This document shows positions 1-22,847 of a stretch of 24,435 bases of DNA, one piece after another. The DNA lies in NCBI RefSeq assembly GCF_000143415.4, contig NW_003314378.1:376990-401424 (forward strand), given 5' to 3'. The notes under the pieces are model-generated. The model saw nothing but the letters and a program-made list of their open reading frames with translations. It searched no databases and was not told the DNA's origin. Position 1 is the stretch's first letter. Every line of letters begins with the position of its first letter. The stretch comes from Selaginella moellendorffii. Lineage: Eukaryota > Plantae > Lycopodiophyta. The position numbers and the translations under genes were made by a program.

Positions 1-92
1 AACGTTTATAACTACTGGGCAGTTGCCGGTTCGATAGAGGGTTTTGCACACAGGGTGATTACAAGACTGCGGCAGCCCATCTGGTTTCTTCC

Positions 93-3000
93 ATGGAGGC
101 GGCTCTCCTGGTGGAGGACCCTGAACTACAGCTCAGTCGGCTGAGTGATGCAAGTCCGTTTTTAGTTGATTGCATAGACACTTACAAAGGCTCCTCGCTT
201 GAAAATCTAGAGACTGAAACAGCTGAGCCCAGGGATCATCTAGAGACTGAAACAGCTGAGCCCAGGATCCCGCATGCGCAGAAGGTAGAAAGATCCTTGA
301 AGCTAAAAAGAGCAGAAGCATATGCACATATGGGAATGGCGCAACTTGTACTGCTCAATTTAGTCGACAAGGCTTGCAAATGTCTCCATGCTGGTGCTGA
401 ATTGCTGCTAAGCGAACATGGATCTTCCGAAGATGCACAAGTAAGAGGAGTGCTGTTCATGTTACAGTACACACTTGCCGGGGTTCGCCTTGAGTATGGT
501 ACACCCGAGGAAGCTTTGGGGCTGTACGCGCAATGCAAGCTTTTGGCTCCAACACCAAGACTCGAGCTCAAGTGCGATGTTCACCTGGCTCACTGTGTCA
601 AGCGCCAAGGTCATTTCCGGGAGGCCACCCAGATGCTGACCAGGCTTTTGACAAACAAGCAAGGTTTGTTGGCCGAGGAGCGTGATGTCAACGCTCAACT
701 TCTGTTTGAGCTTGGGCAGAGTCTGCTTGGGACTGAGAACACAATCCAAGCCGTTATCAACCTTGAGGCCGCAAGAAGACTCTGGGAGGAAGTGGCAGAC
801 ACTTCAGGCTGCCTGCAGTGGTGCTGGTGCGTTCTTTTCCAAGCTTATATGTTGCTCCAGCGGTTCTCAGATGCATTGGATCTTGCTAAGCTGATATCAA
901 GTAACTTGGAGAAACTGGCACCAGGCGCAGAGCAGCTCTGGTACTTGATCAATGGGGGTAACTTTGCTTTTTTCGAAGATCACGAGTTTGTACGGGACAA
1001 GCTTACAGCATGCCTCGACACTGGCAGCCAGGAACACGATTGGCTGGAAAAAACCAGCATACTCCTCAATCTGGGGAACGCTTACCGGCAACTTGGGGAC
1101 TCGGATGCAGCTTTGGAGAAATATGAGGAAGTGTTTGCCTGCATTTCTAGGCTTTCGATACAGGAGGAGGCTCTAGTCCAGGACACTCTGGCATGCGTGC
1201 ACCTCAACCGCTCCGTGGTTTACAGGAACCAGGCGCTAGAGGAAAACCAGAGCAGGTGGATCGAATTAAGCAACAAGCAACTGACTGAGGCACAAGCAGC
1301 AGTGACAATATATCAGCAAGCTGGTCAAGCCCCTTCAGAGCTGGGATTCGCGTACCTTTCACAAGCAGCTGCTCTCATCAACCTAAAGAGCTATAGAGAT
1401 GCTGAAGCATGTCTAGACAGGGCTGAAGCTCTAACTAGCGGCAGCGAGCTTAAAACTGCCAAGGTCATGCTCGTGCGAGCTGGACTCCTAGAGGGCAAAG
1501 ATGAACTCGAGAGAGCACAAGTCTCTGCACACAAGGCACTCTTACTGCTAATGGAGATGCAGAGTAGGTTAAGAGGCCTGGAACATGCATGGGTGACTTT
1601 ACTTGCTGGAGACATGAGGAAGGCCTTCTATTTTATGCAGAAGCTGCTTATTGCAAGCAATAGGTACATGGACGCTCTCTTATGGGCCGAGAGGAGCAGG
1701 ATGCGGCTATATTTCTACAACATCAACCAACGAACTGTGTAATGAGATTACCACGTTTGTTCACAATCTTGATTTCTTTTAACTCTGAAACAGGCAAGAT
1801 GGAGAAGAGGGGGGCCTCTTGCGCTTCGACAGGGATGACCAGTACGCCATTGATTGCATCCGCGAGGCCGTGACAAGCTGTCCTCCAGGATCGGCGGTGG
1901 TGGAGTACACGTGTCCAACAAGTACGGAGGACGTCTTATACATATACGTCGTTCAGCAGGAGCAGTGTGCAGTTCATGTGCGGCAGGTACGCGTCTGTCG
2001 AGTTGTATGCTCTACTCAACCTATCATCTCAGGTGGACTTGAAGAATTTTTTCAGCAGCAAGCCGAACAAGAGGCTAGGCAAACGCTTGGACGCTCTTGT
2101 GAAGCGAACTCGGACAGCCATTGCCAAGGACACAGCTGAAGTTAAGGTCGGCCTGGGGATCCTTCACGAGTTACTCATCGTCCCAGTTCAGGAACTCCTG
2201 GCGAGCTGCAGCAGCGTAATCTTTGCTCCCCATGACGTCCTGTCACTGGTGCCATTTGCTGCACTGTACGATGGAAACGAGTTCCTTGTGAAAAACAAGG
2301 CAGTGGGGACGGTACCATCACTTCGAGCTCTGGGCCGCTGCCTCATCCGGCAGGAGGAGTTTGCCAAGAGAGACAGAGCAACAGCTTTCGTGGCCGGAAA
2401 TCCAGAGCCGATGGGCCTGGGTCTACCCCAGCTCAAAGGAGCAGCTCAAGAGGCGGGTGAAGTTGGACAACAGCTTGGTGTGGACGCTGTTATAGGCTCC
2501 GGAATGACGAAGGCACAGGTGATGAGCAATATGAGCAAGGCCAGCGTCGTCGTGCTCGTCACTCACGGGCTTTTGGACCGCTACTTTCAGCATGGGGCTC
2601 TAGTCATGCAAGCGGGCTCCACAGCGAGTGTTGCTGGGATGCGAGAAGCTGCGAGCAGTGCTCTAGTCATGCAATCGGCGGCTGCGAGTGCTGAAGCTGC
2701 AAAGTGCAGAACTGATGAGGTGATCACAGCCAAGGAGATCGAGACACTCGAAGTTCAAGCAGGCTTGGTGGTTCTCAGTGCTTGCCATGCTGGTGAAGGT
2801 CAAGTCTCAAGCGAAGGCTTGCTTGGACTGGGGCGTGCTGTGCTTCAAGCAGGTGCTGTTTGTGTTCTGGTCACGCTGTGGAAAGTGAACGACGCTGCAA
2901 CTCCAGAGCTGGTAACAGGTACGCCAAAGCCAGGCCCAGCTTCTGTCTCATTTTTGTGCTTCTGTTTTATCAGGATTTTTTGACGAACTCCTTAGAGGAC

Positions 3001-3122
3001 GACGTAATGTTCACGACGCTCTCAGAGCAGCAATGCTCAGAATGCTACACTTAGACATGCCAGTTCGTATATGGGCACCTATGGTGGCCTTTGGTTCGCC
3101 AGGACTGATGTTAAATTGGTGA
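93..3122 (+). CDS. TPR-repeat + C-terminal CHAT (caspase HetF-associated with TPRs) cysteine protease, about 957 aa; exons 93-1738, 1794-1986, 2033-2918, 2974-3122; may have a further 5' exon
   Basis: Removing three GT-AG introns joins ORFs 93..1742, 1819..2139 and 1967..2983 and a last exon in frame (2874 nt, TGA at 3120-3122). TPR-like helices include ILLNLGNAYRQLGDSDAALEKYEEVF and ALLWAERSRMR. CHAT motifs: LHELLIVPV, PHDVLSLVPFAAL, VPSL, GNP..LPQLKGAAQE, VLVTHG (His codon 2564), LVVLSAC (Cys codon 2783), EGLLGLGRAVLQAGA..VLVTLWKVND, ALRAAML..P..WAP..AFG. Confidence 0.88.
205..266 (+). repeat. In-frame 33-nt tandem duplication (LETETAEPR x2)
   Basis: ATCTAGAGACTGAAACAGCTGAGCCCAGG occurs identically at 205-233 and 238-266. 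Confidence 0.95.
1739..1793 (+). other. Spliceosomal intron 1 (55 nt, phase 2)
   Basis: GTAATG...TTTTAACTCTGAAACAG. Removal deletes the TAA at 1740 and restores the frame into the 1819 ORF. Confidence 0.85.
1987..2032 (+). other. Spliceosomal intron 2 (46 nt, phase 0)
   Basis: CAG|GTACGC...CATCTCAG|GTG. Joins HVRQ to VDLKNFF in the CHAT frame. Confidence 0.85.
2919..2973 (+). other. Spliceosomal intron 3 (55 nt, phase 1)
   Basis: AG|GTACGC...TTTTATCAG|GA. Removal gives the conserved CHAT end GFFDELLRGRRNVHDALRAAMLRMLHLDMPVRIWAPMVAFGSPGLMLNW*. Confidence 0.88.
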
Positions 3123-3215
3123 GGTTGTGGCTGAAGTGTTGTGTGATTGATTGTGGTGTTCGTATCAAATGTACTGTATGTTAATTTATAAATATTCAGT
3201 CATTCATAACACCTT

Positions 3216-3443
3216 TCAATATGTTTCTTCATTGTCACAATCCTGTTCAACCTCTGTATAGTCTTTTTCTAGGGCTGCCAAGTCTTCTCTGGCAATGGAG
3301 AGCTCTCCCTCTTCCATACCTTCACCAACATACCAATGCACAAAAGCCCATTTAGCAAACATAAGATCGAATTTGTGACTTATGTGAGAAAAAACTTCTG
3401 CAACAGCAGTGTTGTTGCTAATCATGCACACTGCCCTCTTGAC
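3216..3443 (-). pseudogene. TUA: Alpha-tubulin C-terminal fragment (about 75 aa, ending in Tyr)
   Basis: [75 protein letters not shown] matches the alpha-tubulin C-terminus. Normally invariant residues are substituted (AKRAF->AKWAF, EFSEA->ELSIA), and the 5' part is replaced by RT sequence. Confidence 0.9.
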
Positions 3444-3449
3444 ACTAGT

Positions 3450-4126
3450 GCGTACACTCCCCATGGGCTGATGAATGCTGTTTTTTGTTGATCTTCTTTT
3501 GCAACGTGTACTTGATTGAATTCGCTGAATTCATCTAGGAATGAATACATCTCGTGTCCGGCTACCGAATCCAGTATTTCATCCATAAATAAAATTGGAA
3601 ATGTGTCTGTGGTTGTGCTCTCGTTCAACTTTTTGTAGTTCACACATATTCGCAGTTTGCCATTTTTCTTGGGCACTATAACTAGTGGCGACAGCCATCT
3701 AGCATTCTGTATCAGCCTGATGAATTGAGCTTCAATTATCTTATCGAGTTCGGCTTTAACTCTCTCCTGGAAGTTCGGGTTCATTCGGTATGCTCTTTGT
3801 TTCTTCAGTGTTCCTCCTGAAATGAGTTGAATTCGGTGTGTATAGAGATCAGGAGGTATGCCCCATAACTCTTTGTATGACCATGCGAAAACATCCTGAT
3901 TAAGTCGCAAAAGGTCGATAACTTGTTGTCTGAAGTCGGAATCGAGTTCCTGAGCTATGAGAACATTTCGGGGCTTTTCGCTGGTCCCAATGTTTACTGT
4001 ATCAAGGTCTTCACTGACTTTGATCTTTTTTTGGAGAGTGTCTTCTCCTTCAACTAGTGCAGGAGTCTCGTTGAGGTCCATCTTTCTTTGGCTGTAATTC
4101 CTTGGGTTTGATATCCGGAGCTTCAC
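3450..4126 (-). mobile_element. Ty3/gypsy (non-chromovirus, Tat/Athila-like) reverse transcriptase N-terminal fragment, truncated before YxDD
   Basis: [77 protein letters not shown]. Confidence 0.88.
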
Positions 4127-4900
4127 GTTGATTGATCTTTGGCCATGTTTTGGCTTCTTGAGCAGTAGTCAGTTTTGCAAGTGGGCTGCTGATGAAGGGG
4201 AATTGATATCCTCTCAATGATGATGCTCCAAATTGATTAACTCCAGGAACTTGAGAACTCGGTGTCCGTCTGTCAGGACTAAATTCCCGGGTCTTGGGTA
4301 TCGGATTTGGAGTCTGAGTCTGACTGTCTTGTTGCCCGAACTTAGTGAATATTCGTTTGAGAATGTTATTGCGTTGTTGTTGGAGTTGTGATTTTCTGGC
4401 AGATCTATCTTTACCTTCTGTTTCTTTCTGCTGCTTTAATCGGGTCACCTTTAGCGAATGTTATTGAACTCATTCGACTGCATGCTTTGGACTGGGGTTC
4501 CTGAATCAAAGACAGTGTATTTGTATTGTTGATTGGTGTAGATCAGTACAAGTTTCTGAGGATCTACCACCATAATCACATCGTAAAGAGCTTTCTCAAG
4601 CTGTTCGAATGACAAATTTGGAGCTGCTAACCAGCTGAGATCAATATCTGGTGTACAGATCAGTCCTATCCTCCTGATGACGTTTATACGTTTCAGTCGA
4701 GAATAGAGATATTGTGGTCTCAGTATAGGGGGACGTTGTGATGGAATGGGACAAACAATGATTGTCAGAGTGTCCCAATCAATGTTGATATTTGCTAAGG
4801 GAGAGTTGATGATCTCCTGTGTGATCAAAAGTCGGAGAGGGCTGACGATCACTTGATACTCAATTGCGCACAAGGTGATATTTGTGATTTGAATATTTGT

Positions 4901-6010: not shown

Positions 6011-6605
6011 TGTAAGGTCCTGAGTTTGGACTTCTCGGGAGGTCACCCAGCCCAGTACTATTCAAACCCAAGGACGCTTAACTCCAACTATCCCAAGACC
6101 CTTGACCGATTGGAAAAGGGGGTGCACTCTTGTTCATGAGCCCTTTCCCTCTATATTTGAACCCCTATGGATCGTCTTTCGAGTCGTTCTCTTTGGTTGC
6201 TTACAATCCACCACGCTTCCCTGCAAGTTCACACCCTCGTGAACGAAAGTTGAGAGCCGCAGCTCTCCCGAGAGCCTCGCTCTCTTGACACCCTACCCCT
6301 TGGGTCGAGCCCAGCAGGAGCAAACTGGACCAGCCAGATGTCAATCAACATATGGTGTGATTCCCTTAGCCAACCAACAGAGTCGGACCCGAGACCTCTC
6401 TGATACCAAATGTAAGGTCCTGAGTTTGGACTTCCCGGGAGGTCACCCAGCCCAGTACTATTCAAACCCAAGGACGCTTAACTTCAACTATCCCAAGACC
6501 CTTGACCGATTGGAAAACAGGGTGCACTCTTGTTCATGGGCCCTTTCCCTCTATATTTGAACCCCTATGGACCGTCTCTCGAGTCGTTCTCTTTGGTTGC
6601 TTACA
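6011..6605 (-). mobile_element. Complete Cassandra-type TRIM (595 bp) with 5S-rRNA-derived LTR segments
   Basis: Two 195-bp LTRs (6011-6205, 6411-6605; TGTAAG...CTTACA; 7 mismatches). 5-bp TSD ACTTC at 6006-6010 and 6606-6610. tRNA-iMet PBS TGGTATCAGAG (minus strand, 6398-6408), purine-rich tract AGGGAAGCGTGGTGGAT next to the 3' LTR, and no retroelement ORF. Confidence 0.93.
6428..6483 (-). promoter_or_regulatory. 5S rRNA-derived Pol III internal control region (box A to box C) in the 5' LTR; second copy at 6028-6083
   Basis: Minus strand reads AGTTAAGCGTCCTTGGGTTTGAATAGTACTGGGCTGGGTGACCTCCCGGGAAGTCC. The recalled plant 5S segment is AGTTAAGCGTGCTTGGGCGAGAGTAGTACTAGGATGGGTGACCTCCTGGGAAGTCC (about 48/56 identical). 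Confidence 0.88.
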
Positions 6606-6738
6606 ACTTCCTTACAAGTTCATGCTCGTAAATGGAAATTGAAAGCCACAACTTTCCCAAGAGCTTTGCTCTTTTGACACCCTACTATTTATGTTGAACT
6701 TAATTGAAAGCAAATTAAATTTACTAAATGTCAATTTT

Positions 6739-8216: not shown

Positions 8217-8755
8217 CCCGCTTGCAACTACAAGTAGTGTCTATCTGGAGCTGGAGGAGAGCTTGGCGAAGCACTTGGCTGGAGATCTCAGCGAAGAAAC
8301 AGGCATCAACTTCGCGGACAGTCGTGTTTTCAGTCTCAGCCCTGCTCCAAGTCGGGTGTTCGCGTCCTCCTCAGGCTCTCTTTTGCTGGCACACACAGCG
8401 AGCTTGATCTCGGCATCACTTGGACAGCCCCGGTGGATTGGTCTCCGGCTCGGGCTCAGTTCTACACAAGCTGGTACTTGGCTGGCAGCGGGAATGCAAG
8501 GGGATCCATCGTGATTTCGTTTCGGGCAAATGATGGTTCTTCCCGGGACTGTTGCTCTCCAGGCATCGAGGCAGCCGAGGATGATACCGAGGTATGTTCG
8601 TTTGAATGGCCACACGCTACAGGTTTCGTTGGATTGCCAAAACGTGGAGTTTTGGGACTGATGAGATTCACACCAGCAGAAGATCGCAAAGCTCCTGCGG
8701 CTGTGGAGATTTCTCAGCGAGTTTCTATTGCAACCCAGGCCATAACTCTTGACGA
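8217..8755 (+). pseudogene. GPI transamidase component PIG-T/GPI16 fragment, copy A (frameshifted)
   Basis: PLATTSSVYLELE, DLGITWTAPVDWS, YLAGSGNARGSIVI, MIPRYVRLNGHTLQVSLD and FTPAEDRKAP match recalled plant PIG-T motifs (VLAKSSNVYLQLE, DLGLTW, FLMGSGNERGAIAI, QIFPWYIKVYYHTLQ). Homologous to copy B. Confidence 0.78.
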
Positions 8756-8888
8756 TCTATTACCACGATGATCGATTCACAACCCAAGAGGGGGCTTTGC
8801 CAAGGACGAAACGCCGAGCAGCACGAAGGCGGGGGATAATCTCGTCTGGTGGGCGATCTAACAAAAACGCCATGGATTTCGCAAAGAC

Positions 8889-10408: not shown

Positions 10409-11758
10409 TTTTATTATTACTTATTAATCCAATTGATCAAATAAAGTTTATAATTATAAGCATGTTTGTAATTTATATATACAAGATTAATTTTATTGCA
10501 TATCAACCATTAGATGGTAGAATAAAAAAGAATATACTAGAAAAGGTTTAAGAAAGTTTATAAATTATAAACATGTTTATAAATTATAAATACAAGATTA
10601 ATCTAAATGAATAACAACCGTTGGATGGTAGAATATCCTAGAATATCCAAGCATATCCTAAGTATATTCACTACCATCCCAGTCCCCCTATAGGTTTGCT
10701 TAAGCAAACCAAAAGGGCTTTTCATAGATAACAAATTTTCTTGCATTTCTGGGACATGCGTATAGTGCCATTTGTTAAGCTCAATGAGAATAGAACCAAC
10801 ACCTTTAGCCTCATAGAATTTTGCATTGGTGACTCCACAATGGGTACTGGTGTAGGCAAGTCTACCAATTGAACAAAATTTACTTAATTTCTTGACATTC
10901 AAAATTATTGAATACATTGTCCTTTTGAAGGGTGAGCCAATAAATATATACTTCTAGATGGTGTAAGCCTTAATCAAGTATATGTTATTAATTTTAATAT
11001 TTGTGAATTTGAGATTTTATGGCTTAACTCTTTCTAGATTATACCATTTAAGGAGGTTTATTTATCCTATGCAAAGATTCATCCTATTTAGCAAGTAGTT
11101 TGACTTTGTTGTTTACAACAATGTCATTGCAATTGTCTTCTAAGACAATTGACTTTGTTGTAGTTGTTAAACTAGAAACTCTATATATTTACTCATTTTC
11201 TATTTTAGATTACAATTAATTTAAAAAGTTAGAATAAGGATTAACTATTATATTCATTTCAAAAGGAACTTTTATATATATTTATTTGAATTTTATAATT
11301 TATTTTTGCTTTAGATAATTGTAAACATAACAATTATATCATAAATTTATTTATTTTATATAATAAATTTAAAGTTTATAAAATTTTATTTAGGTACTCC
11401 AATGAAGTTTTAATGGTGTGGCATTTAGAAAAAGCAGTAAAAATATATCAATTTTTACTCTTTAGTGAAATTTCATAAACACTGAAAACATATATTGTGT
11501 TATAACATTACAAAGATAGAATAACTTCTTATTCTACTGTTGAAAAACCACTCAAATATGCTAACAATATCATAAATTTTATCACAACAATATAAACATT
11601 TAATAATATAAGCATTCAAGATTATTTTTTAATTTATGCATATCTTCAATTGAGAAAGAGTTTATTAAAAATTTATATATATACATTCAATATTAGATAT
11701 ATAAATATAATTCTTGTATATATTGTTATTAAGTTAAAATTTAATATTAAATATTTTT

Positions 11759-11933: not shown

Positions 11934-12120
11934 TTGGTGGAGGTGATATGCACTTTAGATTATCCCTGAGGATTGTTTGGATTTGGGATTTTGGTTTACA
12001 TCTAGGTTTTTCCATTTGTTTTTTCCCTTTAGGATTTTGGTTTAGATTTAGCTTTTTGCATTATCTAGATCTTCATTTCCTTCTAGCTTTTGTCATTCCT
12101 CTTCTTTCACTCTTTCTTTT

Positions 12121-15100
12121 TTGTTCATCTTCATAGCAAATCAGCAATCTCCTCCTTTGACTCTAGAGCAGCAGTTGGTACAATTGCTTGATGCTATGTG
12201 CTTACAATTGAACAACCAAACTCAGTTGATAGCGGCATTCATGGCATGTGGTACAACTTCTCCTGCTCTTGGTGCCAATCCTCGCATTCAGCTGGAGTTT
12301 TTTCGTGGGAATCCTGGGGATGATGTGTACTATTGGTTCAATCACTTCACAGTGATTGCCACATATCATTCTTGGGATGATAATCGACATTTGCATGAGT
12401 TTCCCACATGTCTCCAAGGGACGGTGTTGTAGTGGTACAATGGTTTGAGTGCAGCCACTTGTAGGGATTGGAGTGTTCTCCCAGACGTCTTCAAACGCAT
12501 ATTTGGACATGCCGACGATTGTGATGATGCCTTCCAACAATTACATCATCTTCGCCAAGGGCCATCTGAGTCGGTGATGCAATTTAGCTTTCGTTTCCGA
12601 AGTCTTTTGCTTTGTGTGGAGCCAAATATGTCGGAGCGGATTAAGCTAGGAATGTTGTGGCCAGCACTTCATCAAGATCTTGTCGGACTTATGCATGCAC
12701 TTGCTCCAGCAACTCTTGACAATGTTTTTTGCTTGGCACAACATTATGAGATGTCACCTCGTCCACTTCTTGCTGCCCATCCTTTTGCTCCTCTTCCTGT
12801 AGGCGATGGTTCTGTTCCAATGGAGGTTGGTGCTGCTGCTGCTCGAGTCCAAGGACAAGGGCAAGGACGTGGTTGTGGCCATGACGTTTGTTGTTGGGCA
12901 TGTGATGAAGTTGGGCATACCTATTGGCATTGTTGGCGTTTTTCGGATTAGCAACCTCCATTTCCTGGGTGGGGACTTTGGCATCAACAACATCCCGTTG
13001 GTGTTGCTGTAGTGGAAGGTTTAGACACTACAATGCATCCGGGAAACGAAAAGTTGCGCGAGTAATGGAGGGACCTTGTGTGAATAATTCAATGACCCCT
13101 CCATCTTTCTTTCGGGAGTATCATCAAGGGGTTCACTCGGCATCGGTTCATTCAGTGTTTATTTTCCAAACTCATTTTTATAACAAGAGGTTTCCTATTA
13201 TTCTCTCTATATTGGTTGATACAGATTTGAGTTTATTTTCTATTGCTCAACCTATTGGCACAAGTTGCCGTTTACACTTGCGTCATGCGGTATAACCAGT
13301 TTTCATTCTTTATGGCAATAGCCGTACACATGCATGTGCACGGGATGAGGCGGACCTGGTTGTGCGTGTGGGTGATCTTGAGCTTGAGTTGCAATCCTTG
13401 CGGGTAGTGCCGAGTTAAGCTTCTGACCTCATCCTTAGTATGAATTGGTTGCAACACAATCATGCTAAATGTGACTTTGAGGCTTCTTCCCCTTGTCTCA
13501 TACTTCTTTATGTTTCATCCATTCCTCTCACTTTTGTACCTCTTCGTCCCTCTATTTCTACTTCTGCTTCCATTACTTTTGTTCCCCTATTATTTCCTCC
13601 TATGTTTCCGTCTTGTTCTTCTCTTCCCTTTTCCAGTCCCTTCAACAATCTTTGTGTTGCAGTGGTTGACCAGCTTATGAAGGAGTATTCTGATCTCTTT
13701 GACTTTGACACATCGTCTGGGGCCAAGATTGCCACACGTCATCCAATTCCAAATAGGGATGCTCGTTTAATCAAGGTTCCTGTTCGTTGTCGGTCACCCA
13801 AAGAGATCAAGATTTTACGCGCAAATGTTAAAGAAATGTTAGAGAAGGGTGTTATTCGGAAGTCACAATGTCCTTGGGTATGTGAACCTTATCTTGTGAC
13901 GAAGCCTGATGGGAGTATTTGTTTATGCATCAACTATCATCCGTTAAACGAAGTGACGATCCCAGATGTGTACCCTCTTCTTCACACTGTTGATCTTTTG
14001 GATTGTCTAAGGCGAAGTCATTGGTTCACCAAGCTAGATCTTGCTTCTGGGTACTGGCAAGTACCAATAGCCAAAGAAGATATTCCTTAGACTGCTTTTC
14101 GTATACCATTTAGATTGTATGAGTTCTTGGTGATGCCGTTTGGTTTGAACAATGCTCCAGCAACTTTCCAACGGATGATGGACGAAGTCCTTTGCGATAT
14201 GCTAGAGGTGACTGCTGACTTCATTGATGATGTCTTGATCCATTCGGAGGGGATGTGGGAGGAGCATGTTCATGATGTTCGTAAAGTGTTGGATTGGCTA
14301 CGGGACGTTGGTTTAAAGCTGAAGTGGTCAAAGTGCGTGTTTCGTTCCAAGGACACAACTTATCTTGGGTACTATATTTCTCCTGAGGGTTTGCAAATTG
14401 ATCTTGACAAACTTGTGGCTATTCTAAAGTTCCCTACTCTGAAGTGTGTAAATGATGTGTAGTGCTTTTTGGGCAAGGTGCAGTATCTCGGTCGCTTTGT
14501 GGATCATCTTTTTGATCGCACTGCACCATTGCAAGCGTTGCTGAAGTCATCAACATCATCTTTCATCTGGTCTCCGGATTGTCAGCAGGCATTCATGGAT
14601 CTCAAAGAGCTATTGACGACTCCTCCAGTTTTGGCATATCCTGACTATACTCGACCTTTTATTTTGCGCGTGGATGCTTTTGACATTGGTGTTGGAGGAG
14701 TGTTGATGCAAGAAAGCTTGAGTGTGCCTTGTCAGTGCCATCCCATTGTGTATATAAGCCATACATTACAACCAGCGGAGATGAACTACTCCACGATAGA
14801 GGAGTGTTTAGCAACACTCTGGGGTTTTGAGAAACTTCAGACATATCTACATGGTTCTTGGACATTACTTAAAGGTGACCATGCTGCCGTCACTTTATTA
14901 GTGAAATGGAAGAACTTCGTTAGTCGTACTACTAGGTGGGCATATGGGACATCATTGTGTAACTGAGAAGCTGCACAGGTTTTCTATTGGCCGAAGATGC
15001 GACGTGATGTTATCCGGTATGTGCATAGCTGCGTTTGGTGCCAAACTCGTAATATTCCCCCTCGTGTCGTGGAAGGACGGTTGGCATCAATTACAATTTC

Positions 15101-15300
15101 CCGTCCATTTGAGTTGGTGGAATTTGATCTTATAGGACCTTTTCCATGGTCGATTGCTGGCAATGAGTATGTTATTATTGTTTTTGACTACTCGACTCGT
15201 TGGGTGGAAGTTGATGCTCTTGCTAGCATCTTTGCAACTGTTGTTGGATACTTCCTCCTCAATCAAGTAGTGTTCCAGCATTCTTGTCTAGAGTAGATTC
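12121..15300 (+). pseudogene. Outer element gag-pol, 5' part (Gag, CCHC, PR, RT, RNase H, IN N-half), with stops and frameshifts
   Basis: LRQGPSESV, VPMEVG, CWACDEVGHTYWHC, ILVDTD (decayed protease), KLDLASGYWQV, VMPFGLNNAPATFQ, FIDDVLI, VDAFDIGVGGVL, NYSTIE and CVWC...DLIGPFP. An internal deletion lies between RNase H and IN near 14945. Confidence 0.9.
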
Positions 15301-15688: not shown

Positions 15689-15786
15689 GTTTGATTCAGA
15701 TTGTGTTTTTTTGTTTTTTGATTTAGCTTGTTTTGATTGTTTGATTACCTTTGCCTTTTTTCCCCCTTTTTTCTTTCTTCTTGCCG

Positions 15787-16758
15787 ATGGAGTCTCCAAG
15801 TCATCCTGATTTCTTTGCTAAAGTCCTTGCAAAAATCCAGTCTGAGAATACCCAGGTGAAGGCGACCCTTCTTCGCATGCAGCAGGAGCTTGCTTCACTT
15901 TCGGCTCAAGGATCCAGCAAAGTTCCTGAACCGAAGGTGAGTTTCCCAGTGAAATTTTCAGGCAAGCGTTCGGAGCTTCGCGGATTCCTGAACCAGATGG
16001 AGTTGATCTTCGCACTTCAACATCGGCGGTACCCCACTCCCGAGTCTCAAATCGGCGCGATTGGGACGTTGCTTGAAGGTGCAGCCTTGTCATGGTTTTC
16101 TCCTCTTCTGGAGAAGAGCATGAAAGGGGTCATGGTTCCGGAGCTGATGGATCTTCAATTGTTCAAAGAGAAGCTCGAAGCATGTTTTGGCGAGACGGAT
16201 CGGGTTCGGGCTGCTACCACAAAGATGAGACGTCTCTCTCAGGGGTCTCGTCCTGCCGTGATCTACGCTGCAGAGTTCCAACTCCTTGCTTTGGACACTC
16301 AATGGGATGAGCGGGCCCTGATTGACCAATTTCGTTTCGGCCTCAACAACGGTGTCAAGGATTTGTTGCTCACCATGGAGGATCCCAAGGACCTATCGGA
16401 TGCCATCAACAAAGCTGTTCGATATGACAATCATCTCTTTGAACGTCGTCAGGAAAGTCGCCGCGCCGCTGTTTTTCCGTCCCAGACTTAGGAATCCCAG
16501 CTTGAGTCTTCGGGGCATACTCCTGAACCTACTGCTCCGGTTCCAATGGATATTTCTGGTACTCCCCGACTCATTAGAGGGAAGTTGAGTCTTGCTGAGA
16601 AGCAACATCGAATATCTCATAATCTTTGCCTCTATTGTGCTGATCCTAATCACAAAGCAGCTGTATGTCCCAAGAAGCCTCCCCGACTGCTCGAGTTCAC
16701 TCTGCCTCAAAGTCCACCTCTATTGCAGTCGGGAAACGACCCTGTCCAAACAGAGTAG
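15787..16758 (+). pseudogene. Inner element gag (premature TAG at 16489-16491), with CCHC knuckle
   Basis: PEPKVSFPVKFSGKRSELRGF, LSQGSRPA..YAAEF, QFRFGLN, VPMDI and CLYCADPNHKAAVC, in the same frame either side of the stop. Confidence 0.9.
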
Positions 16759-19700
16759 GAGCTGTCTGTTTAGACTCCCTGAATAAAAATCACTTTTCTT
16801 CTTTATCAAGCTCCTCACCACCTTTCATCAAAGCCACCACCAATTCCCGCAACTTCTGAGTCCCATGTCTCCTTTCTTTCACCGGACAATCAGGACTCAA
16901 GGCTCTGGCACTACTGGACTCGGGTGCAACTTCCTGCTTCATGGACACGGACTTTGCTGCCCGACATCACGTTCCTCTTTCTCCTACCATACGGGATTTG
17001 AGGGTTGAAGGCATCGGCGGGCATTTTGTGTCTCCATCTTCTGGACTTAGGGAAATGTTGCCCGTTCGAGTACACATCGGGTCCACCGTCACCGATATCG
17101 CCTTCAACATCATCAACAACAAGTCCTCCTTTGTGGTGCTCGGTCTTCCTTGGTTCCAACTACATCAGCCTCAGATCTGTTGGAAGGAATTACAGCTCAT
17201 CTCTCCCACGGCTTCCCCTGCTGTTCATCGAGTCCGAATCAGGAATCAGGGTTCTGTTCCTGACTCTACAAAGTTTTCACCATCTTCTTTTTCCTCTCTT
17301 CCATCTTACACTGGACCGTATCCTCGTCTCATCATTCCATTTAGTCATACGCCTCCTCCTATCTCCACAATCACTATGAAAGAACTCCTCCATGAAGAAC
17401 CTCTTTTCCTTTTTGCTTTGCATGTTTCTCCTGTCAGTCTTCCTGAGAAGTATCATGATTTTGGGGATGTGTTTGACAAGAAAAAAGCTAGTGTACTGCC
17501 TGTTCATCGGCCTTATGATTGTCCCATTGATTTACAGGAAGGAGCATCACCTCCGTGGGGGCCTATCTACGGGTTATCCCTGTCCGAGCTTAAGGCCCTC
17601 AAAGAGTATGTGGATGAGAACCTTGCCTCAGGCTACATTCAGCATTCGCAGTCCCCAGCTAGAGCGCCTGTCTTCTTTGTCAAGAAGAAGGATGGGAGCT
17701 TGCGGCTAGTCATCAATTACCGAGGTTTGAACAAGGTGACTATTCGGAACTGTTATCCGCTGCCCCTGATCTCGGACCTATTGGAACGCCTCGGCGGTGC
17801 CCGCTTATTCACCAAGATCGACCTCCGTGGAGCATACAACCTGATCCGGATCCGGCCTGGTGATGAATGGAAGACTACGTTCCGAACCCGCTATGGCCAC
17901 TTCGAGTACCATTTGGTTTGACAAATGCTCCAGCAGTTTTCCAACACATGGTGAACGGTCTTTCGGGAGTTTCTTGATCAGATGGTGATCATTTACCTTG
18001 ATGACATCCTCATCTACTCAAAAACTCAGGAGGAGCACGACGAACATGTACGCAAGGTGCTAGCGAAGCTGCGAGAACACGGCCTATATGCGAAGCTTGA
18101 GAAATGCTCGTTTGATAAGCAGTCTGTGGAGTTCCTTGGGTACATTGTCACTCCTGAGGGTATCACGATAGATCTTGCCAAAGTCAAGACTATTCTCGAA
18201 TGGGAGCCTCCACAATCACTGTCGGACGTTCAGGTTTTCCTTGGCTTCGCCAACTTCTACTGCAAATTCATTGATCACTACTCTGACATTGTCCTTCCTC
18301 TCACGCATCTCACTCGCAAGGATGTTCCCTTCTCTTGGTCTGCTACTGCCCAGCAGGCCTTCGACACACTCAAGACGGCCTTCAGTTCTGCTCCCGTCTT
18401 GATCCATGCTGATTCCTCACAACCTTTCTTCATCGAGGCTAACGCCTCCGACTTTGCCATTGGTGTTGTGCTGTCTCAACTCGGAGCGGATCACAAACTT
18501 CATCCGGTCGCTTTCCATTCTCGGAAATTCCAGCCTGCAGAGATCAATTACGAAATCCACAACAAGGAGCTTCTTGCCATCGTGGATTCCTTTGGAGAGT
18601 GGCGCCGTTTCTTGGAGGGGGCGGACCATTAAACAATAGTCTGGACGGATCACAAAAATCTCGAGTACTTTGCCACTTCCCGAGTTTTGAGCCGTCGTCA
18701 AGCAAGGTGGGCACAATTCCTGAGTTGGTTTGACTTTGTTATCAAGTACAGACCTGGAAAGCTTCAAGGCCTTCCTGATGCTCTTTCAAGGCGCTCCTAT
18801 CTCAGTCTTAGGCCTGGTAATCCTGCCTTCGATCAACAGGATCAAGTTATCCTCGGTCCTGATCGGCTTCAATTTATGGCAATTTCCCTGGCCCCTCAGG
18901 ACTCCTCCTTGATGGATGCGATCAGAAATGATCTCCAATCCGATGACCTCGCCAGTGATATTTTCACCCATCTTCAGGCTGGACACCCAGTGACCCCCGA
19001 CTGCCGGCGATTTGACGAGTTCGAGTTCTTAGATGGCTTATTGTACCGTGGGGAGCAGCTTTACGTTCCTGAAGGTGATGCTCGAAGGTTGGTCCTGATG
19101 GCGTGCCACGATAGCCCGACTGCTGGTCACTTCGGCATTGCGAAAACCTATGAGCTAGTTGCACGGGACTTTTGGTGGCCTCACATGGATGACTACATCA
19201 AAGCTTTTGTTACCCCCTGTGACACTTGTGCCCGGAATAAGGTACCTCGCCACCTTCCTTCATGTTTGCTTCATTCCCTCCCGGTCCCTTCAGGTCCTTG
19301 GGAATCCATCTCCATGGATTTCTTGAGTGATCTTCCGAGTTCTTGAGGCTTCAACAGTATTTTAGTCGTGGTGGATCACTTCACAAAGATGGCACACTTC
19401 TTGCCATGTACCAAGGAATTTTCGGGAGAGGACATGGCAAAACTGGTATTCAGGGAAATTTTCCGACTTCATGGGATTCCTACAGATGTGGTTTCGGATT
19501 GGGGGCCTCAATTCATCTCTCATTTCTGGCAACGGTTTTTGCAGCTGCTTGGAGTGAAGGCCAACCTCTCTTTGGCATATCATCCTCAAACTGATGGACA
19601 GTCCGAGGGAACGATTCAGACGCTGGAACAATTTTTGAGGTGCTTCATCAACTATCATCAGGATAACTGGTTCGATATCCTTCCCCTTGTTGAGTTCTCC

Positions 19701-20454
19701 TATAACAACTCTGTTCACTCCTCTCTTCGAGTTTCCCCCTTCTTTGTGAACTCTGGCCGAAATCCCCGATTCAATCTCTCACTTCTCCATCTGAATCCTC
19801 TCGTTCAAATCCCCGCTCTGAGGCATTTATCTCCAACCTCCAGGAAATCCACAACTCCATCTCCTTCCACCTCCATCGTGCTCAGGAATCTCACAAAACA
19901 TTTGCCAATGTCCATCGTCAGGATTGTCCCCTTACAATATCGGGCTTAAAGTCTGGCTCCTCAGGCGAAATATCTCCACCACCAGGCCCTGTCCAAAACT
20001 CGATTTCAAACGCCTCGGTCCTTTTCCTATCAGTGCCATCATTAATCCCGTCACTTATCGCCTTGCACTTCCCTCCTCATATCAAATTCACCCCGTTTTT
20101 CACTCCTCTCTCCTTGAGCCTTATATTCCCAGTTCTATTCCAAATCGGGTCATTCCTCCGCCTCCACCAGTGCAGCTCGAGGATGGGTCTGAGTACGAGG
20201 TTCAAGACATCCTTGATTCCAAGATTTCACGGTCTAAACTCTACTATCTGGTCGACTGGAAGGGTTACGGACCTGAGGAACGCACTTGAGAACCTGCGGA
20301 CAACCTGATTCATTCTCCTGACCTTGTTAAGGACTTCCACCGGCGCTATCCTTCTCATCCCAATCCTCATTCTTTTTCTCCATCTCCCATCCCTCGCCAC
20401 TCATCTCATCCTCCTCTTCGTTCTCGTTCACATCCTCGTTCCACTCGTTCTTGA
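16731..20454 (+). pseudogene. Inner element pol (PR-RT-RH-IN-chromodomain), disrupted by several stops and frameshifts
   Basis: ALLDSGA (16908-16928), [44 protein letters not shown]...CDTC, SMDF, AYHPQTDGQSE, LGPF and chromodomain EYEVQDILDSK...YYLVDWKGYGPEERT*EP (from 20191). Confidence 0.93.
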
Positions 20455-21828: not shown

Positions 21829-22637
21829 TAAGTGATAACTGCGGAAGGCAGATCAAATCCACGGTTTGCATCTAGAGGATGATCGTCGATGTGAAGAAAT
21901 CCCTGCATGAATGGAACAGCATCATCAATATCCCTTCCAAAGCAACCAGCAATATCACAAACCTTGTCAAAGTTACAGCCTGGGTTGCAATAGAAACTTG
22001 CAAAGGAATCTCCACAGCAGCAGGAGCTTTGTGATCTTCTGCCGGTGTGAATCTCATCAGTCTAGCCATGGACCAAAACTCCACATTTCGGCCATCCAAC
22101 AAAGCCTTTAGCGCGTGGCCATACAAATGAACAAACCATGGTATTATCTGGAGGATCATAATGTCAACGTAGTCGACTGCCTTGATACCTAAAGAGTAAC
22201 AGTTTCGAGAAGAACCATCATTTGCTCGAAACGAAATGATGATGGATCCCCTTGCATTCCCGCTGCCAGCCAAATACCGGCTTGTGTAGAACCGAGACCA
22301 ATCCACCCGGGCTCTCCAAGTGACTACAAGATCAAGCTCGCTGTTCATGCCAGCTTCATACTCAAGTAAAAGAGAGCCTGAAGAGGAGGCAAGCACCTGA
22401 CTTGGAGCAGAGCTGACTATTGTCCATGAAGTTGATGCCTATTTCTTCACTGAGATCTCTAGCCAAGTGCTTCGCCAAGCTCTCCTCCAGCTCTAGATAG
22501 ACACTACTTGTAGTTGCAAGCGGGCACTTGCCTTCCAGCTTTGAGCCAAACATCCTGGAGAGTGTCCAGCCTTGCAGCTTGGATGACAGATCTTCTGAAA
22601 CTGCTAGCTTTTGCAAAACAACTGTCAAGGTTAACAT
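21829..22637 (-). pseudogene. GPI transamidase component PIG-T/GPI16 fragment, copy B, with a retained 60-nt intron (21903-21962)
   Basis: LTVVLQ..WTLSRMFG..LEGKCPLATTSSVYLELE, YLAGSGNARGSI, LQIIPWFVHLYGHAL, and FDK|intron|GFLHIDDHPLDANRGFDLPSAVITY, compared with recalled plant PIG-T YDKGFLHIDEYPPDANQGFDIPSA. Confidence 0.85.
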
Positions 22638-22847
22638 CCAATTTTGAATATTAAGGCTATTGGGATGAAAAAAAATTTAATCAACTTATACAAAAATAAC
22701 AAGATCGTTAGTATTACTACATTTTTATAGTATCCATTGCAATGACAAAAATCCATAGTTCATACCTATCACTATATATCATTAGTATTAGCTATGATTT
22801 GTATTTGATTCATTTATTTTGTAAATTACACCTTATAAATCTTTATC
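22638..22847 (+). repeat. AT-rich degenerate direct repeat; second copy at 24241-24435 (runs off the window)
   Basis: Shared collinear blocks CCAATT.TGAATAT, TTAATCAACTTAT, TATTACTACAT, CATTGCAATGACAAAAATCCATAGTT, TATTAGCTATGATT and CTTATAAATCTTTATC, with an offset of about 1.6 kb. Confidence 0.85.

What the first reader, a model, noticed from the sequence alone, without database searches (positions are those of the whole stretch)
93..3122. Intact, intron-containing TPR-CHAT caspase-like protease in a land-plant genome
Seen: three short introns and a hidden last exon stitch the fragmented ORFs into about 957 aa of TPR solenoid plus a CHAT domain, with both catalytic residues (THG at 2564, SAC at 2783) and no disabling mutation, in an otherwise decayed neighbourhood. 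Established: TPR-CHAT proteins are common in bacteria (cyanobacteria, actinobacteria; HetF; Csx29 of Craspase), where TPRs gate protease activation, often in defence or cell death. The well-known plant clan-CD proteases are metacaspases, legumains/VPEs, GPI8 and separase. Inference: this may be an uncharacterised sensor-protease (immunity or cell-death) family of non-seed plants, either horizontally acquired and then intronised, or ancient and lost in seed plants.
Basis: partly seen in the sequence, partly recalled or inferred. Interest (0 to 1): 0.8.

Follow-up and report, generated by a model that had tools for sequence, protein, structure and literature searches.

The report
Spikemoss caspase-like TPR-CHAT protease gene
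This is a real, expressed and correctly spliced gene of the spikemoss Selaginella moellendorffii for a caspase-like (TPR-CHAT) protease; its family is old in mosses, liverworts and lycophytes, was not seen in seed plants, and usually sits beside a possible cell-killing partner gene, so it may be an unstudied plant cell-death or defence switch.

Summary
Exons 93-1738, 1794-1986, 2033-2918 and 2974-3122 give a stop-free 957-aa protein identical to RefSeq XP_024520776.1 of Selaginella moellendorffii. Transcript contigs from four studies skip exactly the three predicted GT..AG introns. Pfam CHAT scores E 5e-39. His (2564) and Cys (2783) are invariant in 85 homologues. The predicted fold (pLDDT 90.5) matches Craspase TPR-CHAT and separase.

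One correction: the 957-aa model lacks its 5' end. The window starts inside the gene at an assembly artefact. The allelic scaffold and the transcripts extend the ORF by 192 aa or more of TPRs.

A 343-aa partner gene (four long helices plus a weak DUF4384 match) ends 44 nt upstream on the same strand. It lies on the same 4.6-kb transcript contigs and could be spliced in frame to the protease.

Plant homologues (lycophytes, mosses, a liverwort) form one clade and share an intron of identical position and phase. The gene is therefore old in land plants, not a recent import. Its nearest outsiders are cyanobacterial TPR-CHAT proteins. Partner homologues also flank the paralogues, a moss gene and a liverwort gene.

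A cell-death or immune role remains inference. The scan found this before on other DNA: the allelic copy (s1-374794, s1-402608) and paralogues (s1-388106, s1-328935).

The parts
10..92 (+). It continues out of the window's 5' edge. The window carries two spurious G (39 and 53) that break the frame.
   Evidence: All four transcript contigs lack one G at 39 and one at 53 and run on 1.5-1.6 kb beyond position 10. The corrected reading NYWAVAGSIEVLHTGDYKTAAAHLVSS is present in P0001. The allelic scaffold L001 is contiguous here.
93..1738 (+). Exon holding most of the TPR/helical-repeat region.
   Evidence: ORF. TPR_12, TPR_2 and TPR_1 hits at aa 311-349 of this piece, about nt 1023-1139. They exceed Pfam cut-offs in the full-length proteins. 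The contigs cover it without change.
1739..1793 (+). Intron, 55 nt, GT..AG.
   Evidence: Skipped in contigs of X1, X3, X4 and X6. Splice sites. Private to this gene: the paralogue, Diphasiastrum and Calypogeia genes lack it.
1794..1986 (+). Exon of 64 codons: beta strands of the N-terminal half of the protease module.
   Evidence: Contigs. Strands E34-40, E48-55 and E61-67 of the AF2 model at pLDDT about 90.
1987..2032 (+). Intron, 46 nt, GT..AG.
   Evidence: Skipped in all four runs (joint 1983/2030 with cut +3). Private to this gene.
2033..2918 (+). Exon with the CHAT domain core. Catalytic His is at 2564-2566 and Cys at 2783-2785. A low-complexity loop lies between them, about 2600-2700.
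   Evidence: Pfam CHAT E 5.4e-39. H243 and C316 invariant in 85 sequences. ATHG and LSAC motifs align with the DdvA CHAT domain. Fold match to Csx29 and separase. The loop has pLDDT 53-64.
2919..2973 (+). Intron, 55 nt, GT..AG, phase 1 inside a Gly codon. It is ancestral to the family.
   Evidence: Skipped in X1, X3, X4 and X6. A minor retained form is seen in X1. Same alignment column and phase in Selaginella P0002, Diphasiastrum P0004 and Calypogeia P0007.
2974..3122 (+). Last exon: the C-terminal helices and strand of the CHAT domain. Stop codon at 3120-3122.
   Evidence: Pfam CHAT positions 245-289. The CHAT hit runs to 289/289 in the full protein. Contigs.
3123..3204 (+). 3' untranslated region. 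Transcript contigs end between 3174 and 3204.
   Evidence: Piece table. A 6-nt allelic indel near 3169.

Best explanation
Window 10-3204 (+) is the 3' three quarters of an expressed Selaginella moellendorffii gene for a TPR-CHAT protease.

Shown:
- It is spliced as predicted.
- It belongs to a monophyletic family of lycophytes, mosses and liverworts that already carried one of its introns before those lineages split.
- In this locus a 343-aa gene lies directly upstream on the same strand, with its stop 44 nt before the annotated protease ATG. It encodes four long N-terminal helices, a linker and a beta-rich part with a weak DUF4384 match.
- That gene is carried on the same 4.6-kb transcript contigs as the protease.
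- Homologues of this partner flank the two Selaginella paralogues, a Physcomitrium homologue and one Calypogeia copy, in varying orientations.

Inferred:
- The TPR region holds the protease inactive until a ligand or protein partner binds, as in Craspase Csx29.
- The active CHAT domain then cuts the neighbouring helical protein, probably in its linker, and frees a membrane-active helical bundle that kills or signals.
- This would be a plant counterpart of the fungal and bacterial pairs of a protease and a pore-former.
- In this locus the two may even be made as one polypeptide, through a 107-nt in-frame intron.
For: Gene, splicing and expression:
- establish the model, the spliced transcripts and the identity with RefSeq proteins.

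Identity as a CHAT protease:
- Pfam CHAT scores 134.8 bits against a cut-off of 24, and 162 bits in the full protein with TPR families above their cut-offs.
- His and Cys are invariant.
- A profile of the family hits the DdvA and Craspase CHAT chains.
- The AF2 model has pLDDT 90.5 and pTM 0.90. Foldseek gives 7y84_C at E 5e-15 and TMq 0.60, and separase 5fc3_B at 1.6e-13.

Longer ORF:
- P0001 (1149 aa) contains the corrected upstream reading.
- Its extra 192 aa carry TPR_2 at E 1e-8.

Age of the family:
- The plant clade has SH-aLRT 100.
- A phase-1 intron is shared by four genes of three genera.

Linkage to the partner:
- Layout of the allelic locus L001.
- Partner homologues in L002 at E 1e-53 to 1e-58.
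- Partner homologues beside a Physcomitrium gene (E 7e-14) and a Calypogeia gene (E 6e-8).

Precedent:
- The Podospora TPR-CHAT Q2L-6 cleaves the clustered gasdermin Q1-6 (PMC8851545).
Against: - No activity, substrate or phenotype was tested.
- The partner's 'executioner' nature is weak. It has no Pfam HeLo or MLKL hit, DUF4384 is below the cut-off (E 0.0032), and a PDB profile search finds nothing.
- The partner's AF2 model has pLDDT 47.5. MLKL, AtMLKL3 and NRG1 CC-R matches at Z 10.5-11.1 sit among unrelated helical bundles of the same Z.
- No partner homologue lies within 8-10 kb of the Diphasiastrum gene or of the second Calypogeia copy, nor beside 80 bacterial relatives.
- RefSeq models the two genes as separate.
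- Other CHAT proteases have non-immune roles, for example HetF, separase and the anti-sigma factor DdvA.
Confidence: 0.5

Rival explanations
1. It is a functional TPR-CHAT protease with a regulatory or developmental job, such as processing a signalling or cell-cycle protein, as HetF, separase or DdvA do. It has no link to cell death or immunity. The neighbouring helical protein is a substrate, adaptor or co-regulated bystander of another kind.
For: - The fold and profile matches include separase and the anti-sigma factor DdvA.
- The partner's pore-former likeness is inconclusive.
- Some family members lack the neighbour.
- The gene appears in contigs of 18 runs from 8 studies, so it is not obviously induced only by stress.
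Against: - Linkage to the same partner family is kept in at least five loci of three genera despite changes of orientation. This argues for a dedicated two-component function.
- There is tandem duplication with dN/dS about 0.5 and, by unchecked earlier notes of this scan, birth-and-death clusters. Both are more typical of conflict genes.
Confidence: 0.33
2. In this locus partner and protease are one gene. Splicing of a 107-nt intron (L001 11143-11249) joins them into a single polypeptide of about 1,472 aa, ordered helical bundle, DUF4384-like part, TPR, CHAT. The window holds only its 3' part. This overlaps with the best explanation, which leaves the point open.
For: - The intron has GT..AG ends and keeps the frame (ILG|MTLF). 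The JGI model P0155 uses it.
- Contigs of 4.3-4.6 kb in three runs span both reading frames.
- The 5' extents of X6 and X1 differ by exactly 107 nt.
- The protease lacks the roughly 100 N-terminal residues of its homologues, and only 44 nt separate it from the partner's stop. That leaves no room for a promoter of its own.
Against: - RefSeq splits the locus, with a partner isoform that reads into this intron.
- The 107-nt match could be chance; my rough estimate is 8%.
- Contigs cannot prove a single molecule.
- The paralogous pairs lie on opposite strands, so fusion is not needed for function.
Confidence: 0.35
3. It is a decaying pseudogene or a bacterial contaminant in the assembly.
For: - The surroundings are broken retroelements.
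- The window's own 5' end carries frame-breaking extra bases.
- The closest non-plant relatives are cyanobacterial.
Against: - Spliceosomal introns are removed in RNA of four studies.
- The reading frame is intact and the dyad is invariant.
- Both haplotype scaffolds carry it, with one synonymous difference in 2.9 kb.
- Only 30-37% identity to bacteria, and a plant-only clade.
- The frame breaks are absent from the transcripts and from the allele.
Confidence: 0.02

Closest known systems
Csx29 / TPR-CHAT of type III-E CRISPR 'Craspase' (PDB 7y84, 8d9f, 7xsq)
   Same: Same architecture, N-terminal TPR and C-terminal CHAT with a His/Cys dyad. It is the best structural match of the predicted CHAT module (E 5e-15, TMq 0.60). 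A profile hit at about 5e-5.
   Different: Only about 14-16% identity. There is no CRISPR context, since this is a spliced eukaryotic gene. The TPR region is far longer (about 740 aa). The activator and the substrate are unknown.
Cyanobacterial TPR-CHAT proteins
   Same: They are the closest non-plant sequences: 30-37% identity over the whole CHAT module, with the same TPR plus CHAT layout.
   Different: A long stem (2.26 changes per site) separates the plant clade. No partner homologue lies within 3 kb of 80 such loci. Plant genes have introns.
Fungal HET-Q2-like TPR-CHAT protease with a clustered gasdermin (Podospora Q2L-6 / Q1-6), and the bacterial gasdermin-protease pairs cited there (PMC8851545)
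   Same: A two-gene cluster of a TPR-CHAT protease and a small putative executioner with an N-terminal killing part and a C-terminal part. This is the model for the proposed mechanism.
   Different: The partner here is not a gasdermin. It has four long helices plus a weak DUF4384-like beta part. Cleavage is untested. Homology between the plant and fungal proteases was not examined.
Separase (Peptidase C50) and other plant clan-CD proteases (metacaspases, legumains, GPI8)
   Same: The caspase-hemoglobinase fold. Separase is the second-best structural match (E 1.6e-13).
   Different: Pfam C50 scores only E 0.05, below its cut-off, and there is no Peptidase_C14 hit. This is a different family from all characterised plant clan-CD enzymes.
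MLKL / HeLo / RPW8-type four-helix-bundle executioners (for the partner only)
   Same: The partner's residues 1-142 superpose on the MLKL N-terminal domain (Z 11.0-11.1), AtMLKL3 (10.8) and NRG1.1 CC-R (10.5).
   Different: Unrelated helical bundles score the same. The model confidence is low. There is no sequence or profile match. The partner has no kinase-like or NLR part.

Membership tests
CHAT domain proteases (Pfam PF12770, clan CD) | Match to the CHAT profile above the curated cut-off | tested here: met
   134.8 bits against a cut-off of 24 for exon 3 alone. 162.1 bits over profile positions 7-289 of 289 in the full-length protein.
CHAT domain proteases (Pfam PF12770, clan CD) | Catalytic His (…THG) and Cys (…SAC) in the conserved motifs | tested here: met
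   H243 and C316 of P0001:741-1149 are invariant in 85 sequences. They align with ATHG and LAAC of the solved DdvA CHAT domain. Codons at window 2564-2566 and 2783-2785.
CHAT domain proteases (Pfam PF12770, clan CD) | Caspase-hemoglobinase fold | tested here: met
   AF2 model with pLDDT 90.5. Top Foldseek matches are Craspase TPR-CHAT, separase, DdvA, gingipains and SAVED-CHAT.
CHAT domain proteases (Pfam PF12770, clan CD) | Cysteine-dependent peptidase activity | not testable with these tools
   Needs a recombinant CHAT domain compared with a Cys-to-Ala mutant.
TPR-CHAT architecture (Csx29 / cyanobacterial type) | Tetratricopeptide repeats N-terminal to the CHAT domain in one polypeptide | tested here: met
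   TPR_12, TPR_2 and TPR_1 are above their cut-offs in P0155. Further TPRs lie in the 192-aa upstream extension.
Craspase (type III-E CRISPR) accessory protease | Encoded with and bound to a Cas7-11/gRAMP effector | tested here: not met
   This is a spliced nuclear gene of a plant. Its neighbours are a helical partner gene and retroelements.
Clustered protease plus executioner cell-death modules (gasdermin-type) | Protease gene kept next to the executioner gene across species | tested here: met
   Partner homologues lie beside three Selaginella genes, one Physcomitrium gene and one Calypogeia gene. They are absent near one Diphasiastrum gene and one Calypogeia gene.
Clustered protease plus executioner cell-death modules (gasdermin-type) | The partner is a gasdermin or another proven pore-former that is activated by cleavage | tested here: inconclusive
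   No gasdermin or HeLo Pfam hit. MLKL-like superpositions are not above background. Cleavage is untested.
Separase (Peptidase C50) | Match to the C50 profile above its cut-off | tested here: not met
   13.2 bits against a cut-off of 27.8.

The most novel reading that the evidence does not exclude
Non-seed land plants keep an undescribed regulated cell-death system. A TPR-gated caspase-like CHAT protease cleaves a dedicated four-helix-bundle/DUF4384 executioner. In this Selaginella locus the two are spliced into one polypeptide of about 1,472 aa, a self-contained executioner-sensor-protease that activates by cutting itself. The system would descend from an ancient, possibly cyanobacterial, acquisition and would have been lost in seed plants.
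Probability: 0.2. Interest if true: 0.85.

Novelty: new variant of a known kind. Interest (0 to 1): 0.6.

Why it matters
Plant regulated cell death is explained today by metacaspases, vacuolar processing enzymes, NLR resistosomes and MLKL-like proteins. No protease-plus-executioner pair of the gasdermin type is known in plants.

A conserved, expressed TPR-CHAT protease tied to a small helical partner in bryophytes and lycophytes would be a testable candidate for such a pair. It could be tested in tractable species such as Physcomitrium. It would also link plant, fungal and bacterial cell-death logic.

The locus is in addition a clean case for asking how a bacterial-type defence protease became, or always was, a land-plant gene and why seed plants lack it.

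On a practical level, the report shows that the RefSeq 957-aa model on this scaffold is truncated by an assembly artefact.

Tried and rejected
Searches that gave nothing:
- A word-index search with exon 1 and with the partner. Both are blank because the 90%-cluster representative (1149 aa) falls outside the allowed length range. This is not evidence of absence.
- A single-sequence PDB search with the CHAT exon. The profile search worked later.
- The ESM Atlas on the partner gave no usable hit. On the CHAT exon it only returned generic bacterial CHAT clusters.
- NCBIfam gave no hit.
- The look-up of encoding contigs had no record for P0001 or P0171.
It worked with 12 rows.
- Paper searches that combined 'CHAT domain' with plant terms gave zero or irrelevant results.

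Ideas considered and dropped:
- I first read the mismatch at window position 10 as an upstream intron. The allelic scaffold is contiguous there, so I rejected that.
- I first supposed that the upstream extension itself was HeLo-like. It is TPR, and the helical protein is a separate reading frame further upstream.
- dN/dS for this gene is not computable. The alleles differ by one synonymous site, and the paralogues are about 50% identical and therefore saturated. Only the tandem paralogues gave a value, 0.49.
- The attachment point of the plant clade among bacteria is unresolved, so I make no donor claim.
- Pseudogene and contamination are rejected.
Full report
**1. The observation**

The window holds ORFs at 93-1742, 1819-2139 and 1967-2983 (+). 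Joining 93-1738, 1794-1986, 2033-2918 and 2974-3122 gives a 2,874-nt reading frame of 957 codons with a single terminal stop. The introns are 55, 46 and 55 nt long with GT..AG ends.

Pfam finds CHAT at E 5.4e-39 in exon 3, the last 45 profile positions of the same model in exon 4, and TPR families in exon 1.

**2. Expression and splicing**

Eighteen public runs from eight studies of one organism hold about 0.9 of the sampled words of the stretch. Contigs of four runs from four studies were laid on window 1-3600. All of them skip 1739-1793, 1987-2032 and 2919-2973, with GT..AG ends, and they end at 3174-3204.

The runs are only guessed to be RNA. DNA cannot lack introns, however, so these contigs are transcripts. 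All three predicted junctions are therefore confirmed. A minor contig in X1 reads through the third intron.

**3. Organism and identity**

An exhaustive HMMER search with exon 3 found 51,213 proteins at E <= 1e-3 and 30 at E <= 1e-30. The top hit, P0001, is 100% identical and is XP_024520692.1 of Selaginella moellendorffii, 1,149 aa.

My spliced translation equals XP_024520776.1 (P0154, 957 aa, on the other haplotype scaffold). It also equals the last 957 aa of P0001. The gene is thus already in RefSeq as 'uncharacterized protein' and in UniProt as 'CHAT domain-containing protein'.

No paper in the searchable library combines 'CHAT domain' with moss or land plants.

**4. The 957-aa model is cut short**

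- All four contigs lack one G at window 39 and one at 53. They run on for 1,497-1,632 nt beyond position 10, with sequence that does not match window 1-9.
- With the two G removed, the frame of ATG93 is open back to position 10, and the contigs' next 30 letters are open too.
- P0001 contains exactly this reading (…HNAGSFADSS NYWAVAGSIEVLHTGDYKTAAAHLVSS MEAALL…) and 192 residues before Met93.
- The allelic scaffold (L001, GL377681.1) aligns with the window at 99.6% from position 10. It is contiguous there, with GG instead of GGG at both places.

I therefore read window 1-55 as the poor end of an assembled piece next to a gap, not as biology (inference). This explains why RefSeq's model on this scaffold starts at Met93.

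The extra 192 aa carry further TPRs (TPR_2 at E 1e-8). Apart from these artefacts the two alleles differ in the gene only by a synonymous T/C at 2788 and a 6-nt indel in the 3' UTR.

**5. The protease domain**

In an alignment of 85 CHAT modules, 13 of them from plants, His243 and Cys316 are invariant. These are His983 and Cys1056 of P0001, or H791 and C864 of the 957-aa model.

A profile of this alignment hits the solved CHAT domain of DdvA (E 1e-11) with ATHG and LSAC aligned, and the Craspase TPR-CHAT chains (about 5e-5).

The AlphaFold2 model of P0001 741-1149 has pLDDT 90.5 and pTM 0.90. Only a low-complexity loop between His and Cys is uncertain.

Foldseek matches:
- Craspase TPR-CHAT/Csx29 (7y84_C, E 5e-15, TMq 0.60)
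- separase (5fc3_B, E 1.6e-13)
- DdvA, gingipains and SAVED-CHAT

Pfam C50 (separase) is below its cut-off and there is no metacaspase match. This is a CHAT-family clan-CD protease, distinct from the characterised plant clan-CD enzymes.

**6. Family and age**

Named relatives are two tandem Selaginella paralogues per haplotype (50-55% identity), Diphasiastrum (about 50%), the liverwort Calypogeia (42-45%), and the mosses Ceratodon and Physcomitrium (37-43%). After a gap in score come cyanobacterial TPR-CHAT proteins at 30-37%. No seed-plant protein appeared.

- A tree of 100 CHAT modules (IQ-TREE, quick search) puts all plant sequences in one clade. SH-aLRT is 100 and the stem is 2.26 changes per site. 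Its attachment among the bacterial sequences is unresolved.
- In the species-representative genome collection, 78 of the best 80 loci are cyanobacterial. That scan used one peptide pattern from an alignment rich in cyanobacteria, so it is biased.
- The window's third intron lies in phase 1 inside the Gly codon of L-V-T-G|F-F. An intron of the same column and phase is present in the Selaginella paralogue, in Diphasiastrum and in Calypogeia. Introns 1 and 2 are private to this gene.

The gene therefore sat in land-plant genomes, with an intron, before lycophytes and liverworts diverged. This excludes a recent transfer.

An ancient bacterial origin remains plausible. The support is the low intron density and the fact that the nearest outsiders are bacterial. 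It is not shown, because other eukaryotic CHAT families were not placed in the tree.

The two tandem paralogues differ with dN/dS 0.49 (TPR 0.49, CHAT 0.39, small counts).

**7. The partner**

On L001 a 343-aa gene (P0151, LOC9635820) starts 1.69 kb upstream of window position 10, on the same strand. Its stop (11148-11150) lies 44 nt before the annotated ATG of the protease (11195).

- The old JGI model P0155 removes a 107-nt GT..AG intron (11143-11249) and fuses the two in frame.
- Contigs of 4.3-4.6 kb span both reading frames. The 5' extents of X6 and X1 differ by exactly 107 nt, which may be chance.
- The protease lacks the roughly 100 N-terminal residues of its homologues. Homology begins at the Gly of that acceptor site.

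One transcription unit is therefore likely. A fused protein is possible but unproven. RefSeq keeps two genes.

Partner homologues lie:
- tail-to-tail after both tandem paralogues (35-39% identity, E 1e-53 to 1e-58)
- head-to-head 1.4 kb from Physcomitrium PHYPA_016418 (E 7e-14)
- 8.4 kb downstream of one Calypogeia copy (E 6e-8)

None lies near the second Calypogeia copy or the Diphasiastrum gene, nor beside 80 bacterial relatives.

The partner has only a sub-threshold DUF4384 match (E 0.0032) and no PDB profile hit. Its model is poor (pLDDT 47.5), with four long helices at residues 2-141 followed by strands. The helices superpose on MLKL (Z 11.0-11.1), AtMLKL3 (10.8) and NRG1 CC-R (10.5). Unrelated bundles score equally, so this is compatible with an executioner-type bundle but no more.

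**8. Mechanism**

Shown: an intact, expressed TPR-CHAT protease, and conserved linkage to one partner family.

Inferred, by analogy with Craspase and with the Podospora TPR-CHAT Q2L-6 that cleaves its clustered gasdermin (PMC8851545):
- The TPR solenoid keeps the protease off until a trigger binds.
- The protease then cuts the partner, in trans or, if the two are fused, in cis.
- This frees the helical N-terminal part.

Rivals are a non-death regulatory protease, and the one-gene reading of this locus.

**9. Earlier notes of this scan**

The scan noted the same thing before on other DNA of this genome. The notes cover the allelic 4,800-letter locus (s1-374794, s1-402608), the tandem paralogues (s1-388106), a 42-kb CHAT cluster (s1-328935) and the partner just upstream of this window (s1-402806).

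I re-derived the points that I use from my own calls.

**10. Surroundings**

The rest of the window is a tubulin C-terminal fragment (3219-3464, minus strand) and broken Ty3/gypsy gag, RT, RNase H and integrase ORFs.

Noticed in passing
window 1-55: The first 9 bases and two extra G (39 and 53, GGG instead of GG) disagree with the allelic scaffold and with all transcript contigs. This looks like a low-quality assembly end beside a gap.
   Followed up: partly
window 3216-3464 (-): An 82-aa ORF lies 94 nt after the protease stop, on the opposite strand. It matches only the last 24 positions of Pfam Tubulin_C (E 2e-4) and continues with an acidic tubulin-like tail. It is an isolated tubulin C-terminal fragment and is also called as a gene on the allelic scaffold.
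   Followed up: partly
window 3422-4873 (-), 12100-15300 (+), 15750-20300 (+): There are several Ty3/gypsy-type retroelement copies with gag, RT, RNase H and integrase split over many ORFs by frameshifts and stops. The copy at 15.7-20.3 kb is the most complete.
   Followed up: partly
window 6011-6685, and 8240-8770 versus 21870-22640: Internal repeats. 6011-6296 and 6411-6685 match inverted positions on the allele at 88%. ORFs at 8433-8771 (+) and 21872-22396 (-) share near-identical peptide stretches, so the same element is present twice in opposite orientation.
   Followed up: no
window 2600-2700 (P0001 aa about 1000-1030): A low-complexity, Ala/Ser-rich loop with an internal repeat (GALVMQAGS… / SALVMQSAA…) lies between the catalytic His and Cys. 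Bacterial homologues lack it (their matches split there) and its pLDDT is 53-64. It could be a regulatory or self-cleavage loop.
   Followed up: no
L002 (GL377701.1:100119-119855), 13134-14410 (+): A 375-aa gene without any Pfam hit lies just after the second protease-partner pair. An earlier first-reader note on a 12.9-kb piece mentions an 'atypical kinase' in such a tandem module. I did not examine it.
   Followed up: no
L006 / L007 (Physcomitrium Logan contigs): PHYPA_016418 (2,112 aa) carries two CHAT domains in one uninterrupted 6.3-kb reading frame. The partner homologue lies head-to-head 1.4 kb upstream.
   Followed up: partly
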